A DNA stretch of 63,999 bases, the filler included, from Octopus bimaculoides (taxonomy: Eukaryota): the NCBI RefSeq assembly GCF_001194135.2. It is 10 parts of 9 records of this genome, joined end to end, with 100 filler letters (N's around TTAATTAATTAA, not from the genome) between each part and the next. Parts side by side here need not be neighbours in the genome. Positions count along the whole stretch, not along the records: positions 10,386 to 14,916 come from NW_026368592.1; 9 more parts are not named here. One strand, 5' to 3'. Below are positions 10,342 through 15,016 of this stretch, piece by piece. The translations under genes and the position numbers were made by a program. The first letter of the stretch is position 1. Each line of letters begins with the position of its first letter. The notes under the pieces are model-generated. The model ran no database searches. It was not told the DNA's origin and saw only the letters and a list, made by a program, of their open reading frames with translations.

Positions 10342-10529
10342 NNNNNNNNNNNNNNNNNNNNNNNNNNNNNNNNNNNNNNNNNNNNATATATATATATACA
10401 CATATATATATATATGTGTTTATATATATATATATGTATATATACATATATATTTATTTATTTATGGGTTTCAGCCTAGTGGCTGTTGTCATGTTGGAAC
10501 ACCACCGTGACTTTCCGTCTTTATGCTGT

Positions 10530-13500
10530 GTTCTCTTCACGTACGTTCGTTCGGTCGATCATTCGTTCGTTCGTACGTACGGACGTAAGTACATGCGTTC
10601 GTTCGTTCGTACATACGTACGTACGTATGTTCGTTCGTTATTTCGTACGTTCGTTCATTCATTCGTTTGTTCGATCGTTCATACGTACTTACGTTAGTTC
10701 GTTCGTTCGTTCGTTCATTCGTACGTACGTACGTTCGTTCATACGTACGTACGTTCGTACGTACTTTCGTTCGTTTGGACGTACGTACGTACGTTCGTTC
10801 ATTCATTCGTTCGTTTGTACGTACGTTCGTTCCGTCGATCGTACGTACGTATGTACGTACGTTTGTTCGTTCGTACGTACGTTCGTTCGATATTTCGTGC
10901 CCACGTAATACGTACGTACGTACATTCGTTCGTACGAATGAACGAACGTACGTACGTAGGTACGACCGAACGATCAAACGAACGAACGAATTACGTAGGC
11001 ACGAAATATCAAACAAACTTATGTAAGAACGAACGAACGAACGAACAAACGTACGTACGTACGTACAAACGAACGAACGAGCTAACGAGCGAGCGAATGA
11101 ACGTACGTACGTACAAACGAGAGAACGAACGAACTAATGAACGGAGAAGCGAATGAACGTACGTACGTACATCCAAAATAATGAACGAACGAACGAAACA
11201 AAGAACGAATGAACGAACGTACGTACGTATTACCTAGGCACGAAATATCGAACAAATGTACGAACGAACGAACAAAAGTACATACGTACGTACAAACAAA
11301 CGAACGAAAGAACTAACGAGTGAATGAACGAACGTACGGACGTACAAACGAACGAACAAATGAATGAACGTACGTACGTCCAAACGAACGAACAAACGTA
11401 CGTACGTACGAAGGGACGAACGAACGGACGTACGAAGGGACGTACGTACGTATGTACGAACGAACAAACTAAGGAACGAACGTACCTACGTAACTACGAA
11501 CGTACGTACGTACGAACGAACGTAGGTATGAACAAACGAAGGAACGAACGAACTAATGAACGAAGAAACGAATGAACGTACGTACTAACATCCAAAAGAA
11601 CGACCGAGCGTACGTACGAACGAACGAACTAACGAACGTACGTACGTACGTATGAACGAACGAAACAAAGAACCAACGAAGGTACATACGTATTACGTAG
11701 GCACGAAATATCGAACAAACGTACGAATGAACGTACGAACGTACAAACTAATGGACGAACGAACAAACGTACAAACGAACGAATGATAGAATTAACGAGC
11801 GAATGAACGAACGTACGTACGTACAAACGAATGAACGTACGTACATCCAAACGAACGAACGAACGAACGGACGTACGTACGAAGGGACGAACGGACGTAC
11901 GTACGAAGGGACGAACGGACGTACGTACGAAGGGACGAACGAACGTACATACGTAATTACGAAAGAACGAACGGACGTACGTACGAACGAACTAACGAAC
12001 GAAACAAAGAACGAATGAACGAACGTACGCACGTATCACCTAGACACGAAATATCGAACAAATCTACGAACGAACGAACGAACAAAAGTACATACGTACA
12101 AACAAACGAACGAAAGAACTAACGAGCGAATGAACGAACGTACGGACGTACAAACGAACAAACAAATGAATGAACGTACGTACGTCTAAATGAACGAACA
12201 AACGTACGTACGTACGAACGAACGAACGTACGTACGTACGATCGAACGAAGGTATGAACAAACGAACGAACGAAACAACGAACGTACGTACGTACGTATT
12301 ACGTAGGCACGAAATATCGAACAAACGTACGAACGAACGAACGTACGAACGAACGAAGGAAACAAAGAACGAATGAACAAACGTACGTACGTATTAACTA
12401 GGCACGAAATATCGAACGAACGAACGAACGTACGAATTAACTAGGCACGAAATATCGAACGAACGAACTAACGAACGTACGTACGTACGTATGTACGAAC
12501 GAACGTACGAATGAACGAACGAACGAACGAAACAAAGAACGAACAAACGTACATACGTACGTACAAACAAACGAAAGAATTAACGAACGAATGAACGAAC
12601 GTCCGTACGTACAAACGAATGAAAGTACGTACGTCCAAACGAACGAACGTACGAAGAGACGAACGAACGTACGTACGTATGTACAAAAGAACAAACTAAC
12701 GAACGAACGTACATACGTAATTACGAACGTACGTATGTACGAACGAACGAACGTACGGACGTACGTATGTACGAACGAACGTACGTACGAACGAACGAAG
12801 GAAACAAAGAACGAATGAACAAACGTACGTACGTATTAACTAGGCACGAAATATCGAACGAACGAACGAACGTACGAACGAACGAATAAATGGACGAACG
12901 AACAAAAGTACATACGTACGTACAAACAAACGAACGAATGAACTAACGAGCGAATGAACGAACGTACGGACGAACAAATGAATGAACGTACGTACGTCCA
13001 AACGAACGAACGAACGTACGTACGTACGAAGGGACGAACGAACGGACGAACTTACGCATTACGAAGAAACAAACTAACGAACGAACGTACCTACGTAACT
13101 ACGAACGAACGAACTAACGAACGAACGTACGTTGGTACGTATGTACGAAAGAACGAACGTATGCACGAAAGAACGAACGAACGTACGAAATAACGAACGA
13201 ACGTACGTAAGTACGTAGGAACGAATGTTCGTTCCTACGTACGTAGTTCGTTCGTTATTTCGTACCTACGTTCCTTCGTTCCTTCGTACGTACGTTCATT
13301 CGTTCCTTCCTTCGTTCTTTCATACGTACGTACGTTGCTTCGTTATTTCGTACGTACGTACGTTGTTTCGTTCCTTCGAACGTACGTACGTTCGTTCGCT
13401 CTTTCCTTCGTTCGTAATTACGTATCTACATCCGTTCTTTCGTTCGTACGAACGTACGTACGTTCGTTTGGACGTACGTACGTTCATTCATTTGTTCTTT

Positions 13501-14916
13501 CATTTGTTCGTTCTTTCGTTTGTACGTACGTATATACGTTTGTTCCTTAGTTCATTCGTTCGTTCATTCGTTCTTTCTTTCGTTCGTTCGTACTTACGTA
13601 TATACGTACGTTCATTCCTTCGTTTGTTCGTTAATTCTTTCGTTCTTTCGTTCATTCGATCGTACGTACGTATATACGTACGTAAGTTCGTTCGTTTGTA
13701 CGTAAGTTCGTTCGTTCGTACGCACGTTCGTTCTTTCATTCTTACGTCCGTACGTACGTACCTTCGTTGTTTCGATCGTTCGTTTCTTCGTTAGTTCTTT
13801 CGTTCGTTCGTTCGTTCGTACTTGCGTACGTTCCATCGTACGTGCGAAAGAATTGATGAACGAGCGAACGATCGAGGGAACGTACGGAAATTCGTTCGTT
13901 CGTTTGTACGTACTTACGTTTTTCGATAGTTCGTTCCTACTTACGGAGAAATGAACGAATGAACGAACGTACGTATGTAGGTACGACCGAACGATCAAAT
14001 GAACGAACGTACGTAAGTACGTAGGAACGAACGTTCGTTCTTTCGTACTTACATATGTACGTACATAAGTTCGTTCGTTCTTTCTTTCGTTCATTCGTTT
14101 GTTTGTTAGTTAATTCTTTTGTTCGTTCGTTCATTCGATCGTACTTACGTATGTACGTACGTAATTTCGTTCGTTCTTTCGTTCTTACTTACGTTCGTTC
14201 GTCCGTTCGTTCGTACGTACATTCGTTCTTTCGATCGTTCGTTTCTTAGTTCGTTCGTTCGTTCGTGCGTACGTACTTACGTACGTTCCATGGTACGTAC
14301 CTGCGCTCGAAGGAACGAAGTACGTACGTAGGTACGACCGAACGAACGAATGAACGAACGAACAAACGTACGTACGTACGTAGAAACGAACGACGGAAAG
14401 AACTAATGGGCGAGCGAACGAAAGAAAGTACGTACGTACGTACAAACGAAAGTACTAACGAACGAACGAACTAATGAACAAACAAACGAATGAACGAACA
14501 TAGGTACGTACGTACGAAGGGACGAACGAAGGAACGTACGTACGTACGAACGAACGTACTTAAGTATGAACGAACGAACGAAAGAAAGAACGTGCATACC
14601 TAATTACGAACGAACGTATGAAATAACGAACGAACGTACGAAATAACGAACGAGCGTACGTAAGTACGTAGGAACGAACGTTCGTACTTACGTATGTACG
14701 TACGTAAGTTCGTTCGTTCGTACGTACGTTCGTTCGTTCGTAATTATGTATGTACGTACCTTCATTCGTTCGTTCGTTTCTTCGTTAATTCTCTCGTTCG
14801 TTCGTTCGATCGTACTTACGTACGTAGGTACGACCGAACGATGAAACGAACGTACGTACGTATTACGTAGGCACGAAATATCGAACAAACGTACGTAAGA
14901 AGGAACGAACGAACAA
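10530..14916. repeat. CpG-rich complex satellite of CGTA/CGAA/TTCG tetramers with internal strand switches and a recurring 19-bp box
   Basis: About 4.4 kb of (CGTA)n interleaved with (CGAA)n or (TTCG)n; TAGGCACGAAATATCGAAC (or 1-2 nt variant) found 9 times forward and once reversed. Confidence 0.97.
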
Positions 14917-15016
14917 NNNNNNNNNNNNNNNNNNNNNNNNNNNNNNNNNNNNNNNNNNNNTTAATTAATTAANNNNNNNNNNNNNNNNNNNNNNNNNNNN
15001 NNNNNNNNNNNNNNNN

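What the first reader, a model, noticed from the sequence alone, without database searches (positions are those of the whole stretch)
10530..14916. 4.4-kb CpG-saturated CGTA/CGAA/TTCG satellite
Seen: almost every tetramer contains CG, whereas the unique flanks are AT-rich and CpG-poor. The array is dense in self-complementary TACGTA and CGTACG words. Established: methylated CpG decays by deamination, so such density implies recent amplification, homogenisation or lack of methylation. Inference: this may be a chromatin-organising satellite (methylation sink, centromeric or insulator-like), about 2.6 kb upstream of a putative housekeeping promoter, though a spacer join at 14961 makes that adjacency uncertain.
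Basis: partly seen in the sequence, partly recalled or inferred. Interest (0 to 1): 0.75.

Follow-up and report, generated by a model that had tools for sequence, protein, structure and literature searches.

The report
CpG-rich tetranucleotide-derived satellite with inversions
This is a real, non-coding satellite at least 4.4 kb long, built from the rare four-base units ACGT and ACGA, copied in roughly 0.8-kb blocks and flipped at short palindromes; its CpGs show no methylation-type decay, and no function could be tested.

Summary
From about 10539 to the piece's edge at 14916 there is a period-4 array with 691 CpGs in 4387 bases. CpG observed/expected is 3.38, and shuffles give 204 +/- 11 CpGs. 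Of 679 CG-to-CG gaps, 661 are multiples of four. "Almost every tetramer" overstates it: 65% of in-phase units keep CG, and pure runs never exceed 4 units.

It is a degenerate satellite with three tiers, not an active microsatellite:
- ACGA and ACGT units.
- A higher-order repeat of about 0.8 kb, with three copies sharing variant units and block pairs 78-99% identical.
- About nine strand switches at short palindromes that carry two recurring junction motifs (X four times, Y three times).

Coding is excluded by the period of 4. No Rfam family, tRNA or relative turned up in any collection searched.

CpG sites were lost only about 2.6-3.5 times as often as the neighbouring A. Between higher-order copies they changed no faster than other sites (10/77 against 25/173). 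This favours a lack of germline methylation over youth alone.

The claimed promoter adjacency lies outside the piece and is void. The organism is unknown. Modest interest.

The parts
10386..10465 (.). Flanking (AT)n / ATAC-type dinucleotide microsatellite; not part of the satellite
   Evidence: TRF period 2, 40 copies; GC 26%
10466..10538 (.). Short unique left flank, 73 nt; the only non-repetitive sequence in the piece
   Evidence: Sequence; no similarity to the array or to fetched loci; no tRNA
10539..10933 (-). Arm in minus orientation (TTCG/ACGT as read on the + strand); an inverted copy of the same repeat family
   Evidence: AT skew -0.44; domain map; inverted BLAST hit 10865-10930 vs 12342-12277 at 94%
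10909..10958 (.). Palindromic junction, minus-to-plus switch, centre 10933.5
   Evidence: Arm 25 nt with 22 matches; DNA fold of 10884-10983 has z = -3.6
10934..13226 (+). Main arm in plus orientation (ACGA/ACGT units), 2.3 kb, 362 CpG
   Evidence: TRF period 4, 570 copies; AT skew about +0.55; per-domain counts
11183..11988 (+). Higher-order repeat copy A (about 0.8 kb)
   Evidence: 11183-11435 vs 11989-12241 at 92%; alignment A1
11989..12788 (+). Higher-order repeat copy B
   Evidence: contains internal duplications of 43 and 95 nt at 12234-12487
12789..13226 (+). Higher-order repeat copy C, ending at the inversion junction
   Evidence: 11183-11253 vs 12789-12859 at 96%; 12327-12436 vs 12769-12878 at 99%; alignment A1
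11235..11253 (+). One exact copy of the non-simple marker TAGGCACGAAATATCGAAC. Exact or 1-mismatch copies start at 10996, 11235, 11698, 12041, 12304, 12399, 12442, 12841 and 14868 (+) and at 10885 (-)
   Evidence: 13 matches at up to 3 mismatches against 0.01 expected by chance
10956..10974 (+). Junction motif X, GTAGGTACGACCGAACGAT, found just after each minus-to-plus switch. It recurs at 13977, 14328 (1 mismatch) and 14824
   Evidence: 4 matches against 0.01 expected
13177..13276 (.). Strongest palindromic junction, plus-to-minus switch, centre 13226.5. It carries junction motif Y, GTAAGTACGTAGGAACGAA, at 13207; exact copies of Y also start at 14013 and 14660
   Evidence: DNA fold -41.5 kcal/mol, z = -9.8; Y motif
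13227..13848 (-). Arm in minus orientation, 94 CpG, locally the most AT-rich part
   Evidence: inverted BLAST hits to the plus arm such as 12456-12649 vs 13630-13433 at 81%
13849..14032 (.). Patchwork of short plus, minus and plus segments, with X at 13977, Y at 14013 and a palindrome centre at 14032.5
   Evidence: fold of 13983-14082 has z = -3.5
14033..14290 (-). Arm in minus orientation
   Evidence: 13609-13843 vs 14088-14298 at 80% direct
14291..14693 (+). Arm in plus orientation, with X at 14328 and Y at 14660. It ends in a palindrome centred at 14693.5
   Evidence: fold of 14619-14768 is -45.5 kcal/mol, z = -5.7
14694..14821 (-). Arm in minus orientation
14822..14916 (+). Arm in plus orientation with X at 14824 and the marker at 14868; cut by the edge of the piece
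   Evidence: 10949-11042 vs 14817-14914 at 89%

Best explanation
This is a non-coding, simple-sequence-derived satellite DNA of a eukaryote whose identity is unknown.

Shown by the sequence:
- The base layer is a period-4 array of two units that differ by one base, ACGT (self-complementary) and ACGA. It is now degenerate: 65% of units keep CG, and pure runs are at most 4 units long.
- On top of this sits a higher-order repeat of about 0.8 kb. Three copies share the same variant units and a 19-nt non-simple marker.
- The same family occurs in both orientations. About nine strand switches each sit on a short palindrome, and two junction sequences (X and Y) recur. The top-level module is therefore X-(plus arm)-Y-(minus arm), with arms from 36 nt to 2.25 kb.

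Inferred mechanism:
- An ancestral ACGW tract grew by replication slippage.
- Once interrupted, it grew mainly by unequal exchange or segmental duplication of blocks of 0.04-0.8 kb.
- The self-complementary ACGT runs, which read the same on both strands, acted as pivots for fold-back or template-switch events. These produced inverted copies, and the junctions were then duplicated along with the blocks.
- CpG density persists because the array's CpGs are not subject to methylation-driven deamination in the germline. Most likely the genome, or this compartment of it, is unmethylated. Extreme youth is not the explanation.

No cellular function is demonstrated. The default reading is neutral or selfish repetitive DNA.
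For: - Period 4 and phase: TRF rows; 661 of 679 CG-CG gaps are multiples of 4, with units ACGA 356 and ACGT 262.
- CpG excess: o/e 3.38, z = 43.
- Degeneracy: longest pure run is 4 units.
- Higher-order repeat: block pairs at 92%, 96% and 99% identity at offsets of about 800 and 442 nt. Three-copy alignment A1 has shared variant units over about 290 columns.
- Marker motif: 13 matches against 0.01 expected.
- Orientation domains. Minus arms are inverted homologues of the plus arm, for example 94% over 66 nt.
- Palindromes at every switch, with fold z-scores of -9.8, -5.7, -3.6 and -3.5 against about -1 for interior controls.
- Recurring junction motifs: X four times, Y three exact copies.
- Non-coding: a period of 4 is not a multiple of 3. 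The ORFs are mechanical TNER, TYVR and FVRS translations of at most 189 aa on both strands. There is no Rfam match near any gathering score and no tRNA.
- No methyl-CpG decay. The unit's A1 is kept in 93.4% of units, C2 in 76.9% and G3 in 82.9%. Transitions account for only 37% of changes at C and 57% at G. Among singleton changes between higher-order copies, 10 of 77 CpG sites changed (6 ts, 4 tv) against 25 of 173 other sites. In pairwise duplicates, CpG transitions are 6.5% per site and transversions 5.5% per site.
Against: - 'Satellite' in the sense of a high-copy family rests on this one array, which is truncated on the right.
- The decay tests use few events (35 singletons). Variant units propagated by block duplication are not independent counts.
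- Homogenisation or biased gene conversion could also mask decay.
- The fold-back or template-switch origin of the inversions is inferred from junction anatomy only.
- No relative was found in any collection.
Confidence: 0.7

Rival explanations
1. Assembly artefact: a collapsed or chimeric low-complexity contig whose inversions come from fold-back chimeric long reads, so the arrangement does not exist in the genome.
For: The piece is short, ends inside the repeat and is almost all repeat. Palindromic junctions are a known artefact class of long-read libraries (my knowledge). No reads could be laid on it.
Against: The junctions are not one-offs. Motif X occurs 4 times and Y 3 times, in differing contexts and with point differences. 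Copies of blocks are diverged (78-99%) rather than identical. Minus arms carry their own substitutions. An artefact would more likely give one perfect palindrome.
Confidence: 0.1
2. A cluster of foldback-type or MITE-like mobile elements whose long inverted arms are made of tetranucleotide repeats, nested or tandemly inserted, rather than a satellite grown in place.
For: The modular X-(plus arm)-Y-(minus arm) layout has conserved junction sequences. An unrelated metagenome contig, L003, shows a (TTCG)n-(CGAA)n head-to-head tract of about 420 bp, bracketed by inverted copies of CTAGGGATTGATCC. Elements with this architecture therefore exist. Drosophila FB elements have tandem-repeat arms (my knowledge).
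Against: No terminal unique sequences, target-site duplications or transposase are seen. The left flank is not repeated in inverted form anywhere in the piece. Arm lengths within a module are very unequal, for example 2.25 kb against 0.6 kb and 36 nt against 258 nt. Mirror symmetry extends only about 25-85 nt from each centre.
Confidence: 0.1
3. A functional chromatin element. This could be a centromeric or pericentromeric satellite using dyad symmetry, an insulator, or a sink for factors that bind unmethylated CpG or ACGT-core sites (CXXC proteins, bZIP factors).
For: The CpG density is very high with no decay signature. ACGT, TACGTA and CGTACG dyads are dense and the predicted cruciform-prone junctions are strong. 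Dyad-rich satellites at centromeres are documented in other species (my knowledge).
Against: Nothing in the sequence requires a function. The units are degenerating, with 35% having lost CG. Block structure is irregular. No conservation in any other collection. A 'methylation sink' would be expected to show methyl-CpG decay, and this array does not.
Confidence: 0.08
4. A microsatellite tail of a non-LTR retrotransposon that expanded secondarily.
For: L004 shows a compound tetranucleotide tract (ACGA/ACGG/ACAG/ACAA) of about 300 bp immediately after an ORF whose C-terminus looks retroelement-like from memory.
Against: Pfam gives no support for that ORF. The window's left flank is (AT)n plus 73 nt with no reverse-transcriptase reading frame. 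A size of 4.4 kb with inversions is far beyond known 3' tails.
Confidence: 0.02

Closest known systems
Human satellites 2 and 3 (HSat2/HSat3), derived from the pentamer CATTC (comparison from my knowledge)
   Same: A simple short unit has degenerated into a complex satellite. Higher-order blocks sit on top of it, and the strand orientation switches within arrays. CpG-containing variants are also present.
   Different: The unit here is 4 nt (ACGW), not 5 nt. There is no sequence relation. CpG density is much higher here. HSat arrays span megabases and map near centromeres, and neither size nor location is known here.
Bkm-type GATA/GACA satellite (from my knowledge)
   Same: A compound array of two tetranucleotides that differ by a single base, interspersed in short runs.
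   Different: Bkm has no CpG and is not self-complementary. It is conserved across vertebrates and enriched on sex chromosomes. No conservation or location is known here.
Ordinary AACG and ACGT microsatellites
   Same: The same unit motifs and the same period of 4.
   Different: These motifs are among the rarest tetranucleotide SSRs, and loci are short. Cnidarians have 1.0 and 0.2 loci per Mb. They make up 0.002-0.003% of moth SSRs. Meloidogyne incognita has 3 and 1 loci of 5 units. A quarter of the Xenopus tropicalis genome has 7 and 15 loci. Here the array is at least 4.4 kb, pure runs are at most 4 units, and there are higher-order repeats and inversions.
Foldback (FB) transposons and long-arm MITEs (from my knowledge; L003 is an example seen here)
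   Same: Head-to-head inverted arms built from short tandem repeats, with strong hairpin potential.
   Different: No defined termini, target-site duplications or coding capacity. The arms are very unequal in length and the modules are tandemly chained.
CpG island
   Same: CpG o/e is far above 0.6, at 3.38.
   Different: GC is 43%, below the usual 50-55%. The sequence is wholly repetitive, and no gene or promoter lies in the piece.

Membership tests
Satellite DNA | Long head-to-tail tandem repetition of a non-coding unit | tested here: met
   TRF period 4 over about 4.4 kb; 661 of 679 CG gaps in phase; non-coding
Satellite DNA | Higher-order repeat structure or block homogenisation | tested here: met
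   Block pairs at 92-99% identity at offsets of about 800 and 442 nt; three-copy alignment A1
Satellite DNA | High genomic copy number, or several arrays in the genome | not testable with these tools
No copies in the metagenome, viral, prokaryote or protein collections, none of which is the source genome
Satellite DNA | Heterochromatic, centromeric or subtelomeric location | not testable with these tools
   Only 144 nt of flank is available; no chromosome context
Microsatellite (active SSR) | Unit of 1-6 nt | tested here: met
   Period 4
Microsatellite (active SSR) | Long uninterrupted runs that sustain slippage | tested here: not met
   The longest pure ACGT or ACGA run in the main arm is 4 units
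Foldback transposon / MITE | Inverted arms bounded by defined termini and target-site duplications | tested here: inconclusive
   Inverted arms and palindromic junctions are present. The left flank has no inverted partner. The right end is cut by the piece's edge
Foldback transposon / MITE | Dispersed multiple insertions | not testable with these tools
   No genome or reads available
CpG island | GC of at least 50% with CpG o/e above 0.6, in unique promoter-associated DNA | tested here: not met
   GC 43.2%, o/e 3.38, wholly repetitive
Protein-coding repeat | Repeat period a multiple of 3 and one long open frame | tested here: not met
   Period 4. ORFs are at most 189 aa, in all frames and on both strands. 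No exact product on record
Structured RNA gene (Rfam) | Match reaching a family's gathering score | tested here: not met
   The best hit scores 40.5 bits against a gathering score of 211. All hits are generic hairpin matches at the palindromes

The most novel reading that the evidence does not exclude
The array belongs to a lineage-specific, germline-unmethylated satellite that is dense in CpG and rich in dyad symmetry. Its ACGT-core dyads and cruciform-prone junctions would be used functionally. One possibility is a centromere-type satellite specified by non-B DNA. Another is a titrating sink for CXXC or bZIP-type factors that recognise unmethylated CpG or ACGT cores.
Probability: 0.08. Interest if true: 0.6.

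Novelty: new member of a known kind. Interest (0 to 1): 0.3.

Why it matters
Arrays built from CpG-containing tetranucleotides are unusual, because AACG and ACGT are among the rarest SSR motifs in every survey read here.

If the unmethylated reading is right, the array is a convenient internal clock. It places about 690 CpGs next to matched non-CpG sites in one homogeneous context, so it could measure CpG mutability in this genome's repeat compartment.

The recurring palindromic junctions are also a clean example of how a self-complementary unit can seed strand inversions inside a satellite. Such junctions are a common cause of assembly breaks.

Otherwise it is ordinary repetitive DNA. It should be masked rather than scored as a CpG island or promoter-linked element.

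Tried and rejected
- Relatives by DNA pattern. The marker motif in metagenome contigs gave one chance hit with no array (L001). Two scans of viral contigs gave nothing. A compound-unit pattern in prokaryote genomes gave one unrelated short repeat in a Gemmatimonas MAG (L002).
- Relatives through spurious ORFs.
  - The first protein search returned only generic (TNER)n products of short AACG-type microsatellites, 36-61% identical and without the marker.
  - The second search, with a higher-order-repeat ORF, returned nothing.
  - The window's own ORFs are not on record.
  - Loci L003-L005, fetched from the first search's hits, are unrelated short tracts.
- The repeat finder was swamped by the 4-nt periodicity, and long-lag autocorrelation was blurred by 18 phase breaks. 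Self-BLAST was used instead.
- Coding, tRNA/SINE and RNA-gene readings were rejected.
- An A-box-like 11-mer in the flank led nowhere.
- Literature searches by sequence strings and by motif words found no description of such a satellite. The zebrafish MoSat papers concern TGCT non-CG methylation and are unrelated.
- My first substitution classification put all A/G changes into the C/G classes. Only its CpG transition and transversion figures are used. The cleaner tests are.
Full report
**Scope**

**1. The observation**

The piece starts with an (AT)n/ATAC-type dinucleotide tract at 10386-10465 (TRF period 2). A unique stretch of 73 nt follows at 10466-10538. From the first ACGT at 10539 (TRF start 10540) a period-4 repeat runs to the piece's edge at 14916. 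The array is therefore truncated on the right, and 4.4 kb is a minimum.

- Over 10530-14916 there are 691 CpG in 4387 nt: o/e 3.38, GpC o/e 0.17, GC 43%.
- 1000 mononucleotide shuffles give 204 +/- 11 CpG, maximum 237, z = 43.
- Successive CpGs are 4, 8, 12 or 16 nt apart in 661 of 679 gaps, so the phase is kept almost throughout.
- Read on the A-rich strand in the frame xCGx, the units are ACGA (356) and ACGT (262), with few others.
- TACGTA occurs 152 times and CGTACG 165 times.

The core observation is confirmed, with three corrections. Only 65% of in-phase units contain CG (687 of about 1057), not "almost every" one. Only one flank exists, and 2 CpG in 144 nt cannot show CpG poverty. The array is not uniform.

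**2. Anatomy: three tiers**

*Tier 1, the units.* The array is a mosaic of very short runs. In the 2.3-kb main arm the longest pure ACGT or ACGA run is 4 units. This is a degenerate, "cryptically simple" sequence and not an active pure microsatellite.

*Tier 2, higher-order repeats.* Self-BLAST with strict scoring finds long off-diagonal matches:
- 11183-11435 vs 11989-12241, 92%, offset 806
- 11183-11253 vs 12789-12859, 96%
- 12327-12436 vs 12769-12878, 99%, offset 442
- 11788-12228 vs 12576-13040, 78%, offset 788

Aligning 11183-11988, 11989-12788 and 12789-13228 shows that the first 290 or so columns share the same order of variant units (alignment A1). This gives a higher-order repeat of about 0.8 kb in three copies, with smaller internal duplications of 43 and 95 nt at 12234-12487. 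A 19-nt non-simple marker, TAGGCACGAAATATCGAAC, recurs 13 times at up to 3 mismatches against 0.01 expected. Of these, 10 are exact or 1-mismatch copies. The marker punctuates the blocks at irregular spacings of 43 to 463 nt.

*Tier 3, inversions.* AT skew flips between about -0.45 and +0.55. The domain map is:
- minus: 10539-10933
- plus: 10934-13226
- minus: 13227-13848
- short alternating patches: 13849-14032
- minus: 14033-14290
- plus: 14291-14693
- minus: 14694-14821
- plus: 14822-14916

Minus arms are inverted homologues of the plus arm. For example, 10865-10930 matches 12342-12277 at 94%, and 11344-11412 matches 13507-13439 at 90%.

Every switch sits on a local palindrome, with centres at 10933.5, 13226.5, 14032.5, 14290.5, 14693.5 and 14821.5. 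Folded as single-stranded DNA, the junction segments are far more stable than dinucleotide shuffles, while interior controls are not:

| Segment | Energy (kcal/mol) | z-score |
|---|---|---|
| 13177-13276 (junction) | -41.5 | -9.8 |
| 14619-14768 (junction) | -45.5 | -5.7 |
| 10884-10983 (junction) | -28.3 | -3.6 |
| 13983-14082 (junction) | -24.7 | -3.5 |
| three interior controls | -5.7 to -13.6 | -0.9 to -1.4 |

The junctions themselves recur. Motif X (GTAGGTACGACCGAACGAT) follows each minus-to-plus switch, at 10956, 13977, 14328 and 14824. Motif Y (GTAAGTACGTAGGAACGAA) precedes each plus-to-minus switch, at 13207, 14013 and 14660. The top-level module is thus X-(plus arm)-Y-(minus arm), repeated three to four times, with arm lengths from 36 nt to 2.25 kb. 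Because X and Y recur with point differences and in different contexts, the inversions are unlikely to be single chimeric-read artefacts.

**3. What it is not**

- *Not coding.* A 4-nt period makes all three frames read the same tetrapeptide repeat. The 28 ORFs of at least 60 aa, the longest 189 aa, lie on both strands and are mechanical TNER, TYVR and FVRS strings.
- *Not an RNA gene.* ARAGORN finds no tRNA. Rfam at E up to 1 returns only generic miRNA-hairpin models at the palindromes, the best scoring 40.5 bits against a gathering score of 211.
- *Not a CpG island in the usual sense.* GC is 43% and the sequence is wholly repetitive.

**4. CpG decay test**

It can be tested internally, because each unit has a non-CpG A next to the CG.

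- Over 1057 in-phase units, A1 is retained in 93.4%, C2 in 76.9% and G3 in 82.9%.
- C and G were therefore changed 2.6-3.5 times as often as the adjacent A.
- C-to-T is 8.6% and G-to-A 9.7%, against A-to-G at 2.0%.
- Transitions make up only 37% of changes at C and 57% at G.
- Of the 369 CG-less units, 168 (46%) have TG or CA in place of CG.

These counts include variants propagated by block duplication. As a more independent test I counted singleton differences among the three higher-order copies over the well-aligned 300 columns. CpG sites changed in 10 of 77 cases (6 transitions, 4 transversions). Other sites changed in 25 of 173 (11 and 14). That is 13% against 14.5%, so there is no excess. 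Pairwise duplicates give CpG transitions of 6.5% per site and transversions of 5.5% per site.

From established knowledge, methylated vertebrate CpGs undergo transitions at roughly ten times the background rate or more, and such changes are overwhelmingly transitions. A two- to three-fold GC-to-AT bias is general even without methylation. The data fit the second picture.

The copies are 8-22% diverged, so "very recent amplification" alone does not account for 65% CpG retention. The favoured explanation is absence of methylation-driven decay in the germline, as in the unmethylated intergenic compartment of most invertebrate genomes. Three caveats apply: the number of events is small, homogenisation is possible, and methylation was not measured directly.

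**5. Mechanism (inferred)**

An ACGW tract arose and grew by slippage, and point changes then interrupted it. Later growth came mainly from unequal exchange or segmental duplication of blocks of 0.04-0.8 kb, which explains the shared variant patterns. ACGT runs read the same on both strands, so they are natural pivots for intrastrand hairpins and template switching. Fold-back events at such runs would create head-to-head junctions, and block duplication then copied those junctions (X and Y). The steps shown are the three tiers, the palindromic junctions and their recurrence. The steps inferred are the order of events and the molecular route.

**6. Searches for relatives**

- The marker motif found one chance match in metagenome contigs (L001, with no array) and nothing in viral contigs.
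- A compound-unit pattern found nothing in viral contigs. In prokaryote genomes it found one unrelated short repeat, in a Gemmatimonas MAG.
- Using the spurious ORF 10537-11016(-) as bait in the protein collection gave 26 weak hits (36-61% identity). All are products of short AACG-type microsatellites in unnamed eukaryote-like contigs, and none carries the marker.
- An ORF from the higher-order repeat gave no hit.
- The window's own ORFs are not on record.

No second copy of this family was seen, but none of these collections is the source genome.

**7. Literature**

No paper describing such a satellite was found. SSR surveys show that the two motifs are among the rarest tetranucleotides:
- Cnidarians: AACG 1.0 and ACGT 0.2 loci per Mb on average (PMC4226868).
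- Carposina sasakii: 0.002% and 0.003% of SSRs (PMC4813223).
- Meloidogyne incognita: three (AACG)5 loci and one (ACGT)5 locus (PMC3091743).
- Xenopus tropicalis: 7 and 15 loci in a quarter of the genome (PMC2735965).

A 4.4-kb array is therefore unusual in composition, although it is ordinary in kind.

**8. Comparison with known kinds (from my knowledge)**

It works like human HSat2/3: a simple unit degenerated into a complex satellite with higher-order blocks and strand switches. It also resembles Bkm GATA/GACA arrays, which combine two tetramers one base apart. Its palindromic modules recall foldback elements. L003 shows that a bounded (TTCG)n/(CGAA)n foldback-like element exists elsewhere. 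Here, however, there are no termini, target-site duplications or balanced arms.

Membership of "satellite DNA" is met for tandem structure and higher-order repeats. It is untestable for copy number and location. Membership of "active microsatellite", "CpG island", "coding repeat" and any Rfam family fails on a tested defining feature.

**9. Verdict**

This is a real feature, correctly spotted. It is a new member of a known kind, a simple-sequence-derived satellite, with an uncommon CpG-rich self-complementary unit and neat recurrent inversion junctions. The functional ideas (centromere, insulator, methylation sink) remain untested, and the sink idea sits poorly with the missing decay signature. 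Interest is 0.3. The most novel reading not excluded is a functional dyad-rich, unmethylated-CpG satellite, with a probability of about 0.08.

Noticed in passing
L003:595-1179: A JGI metagenome contig carries a (TTCG)n tract of about 420 bp that flips to (CGAA)n near 960. It is bracketed by inverted copies of CTAGGGATTGATCC (595-608 and 1166-1179). This is a bounded foldback- or MITE-like element with tetranucleotide arms. It has the same head-to-head architecture as the window array but no other sequence relation.
   Followed up: partly
L004:5260-5560: An ENA metagenome contig of 43 kb that looks eukaryotic has a compound tetranucleotide tract (ACGA, ACGG, ACAG, ACAA) directly after an ORF. 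The ORF's C-terminal motif looks retroelement-like from memory, but Pfam gives no support.
   Followed up: partly
L005:595-613: The contig contains a Nextera adaptor sequence (CTGTCTCTTATACACATCT) near its 3' end, followed by about 35 further bases, so it derives from untrimmed reads. It also holds short ACGT/ACGA and GTCC tetranucleotide tracts.
   Followed up: no
window:10472-10482: CAGCCTAGTGG in the unique flank matches 10 of 11 positions of the pol III A-box consensus TRGCNNAGTGG (recalled from memory). ARAGORN finds no tRNA, and the flank is too short to test for a SINE head.
   Followed up: partly
window:10539-14916: There is a strand asymmetry in how the unit's CG was lost. On the A-rich strand, C-to-A plus C-to-G make up 14.5% of units, against 7.4% for G-to-T plus G-to-C. 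This may reflect variants such as AAGA and AGGA propagated by block duplication, but it is unexplained.
   Followed up: no
window:10386-10465: The array abuts an (AT)n/ATAC-type dinucleotide microsatellite that is itself nearly palindromic (arm 23 nt with 22 matches). Two different simple repeats lie within 75 nt of each other.
   Followed up: no
L002:6780-6990: A Gemmatimonas MAG contig holds a degenerate CGTT/GCACGTTT-type tandem tract of about 200 bp in GC-rich DNA. It is unrelated to the window array.
   Followed up: no
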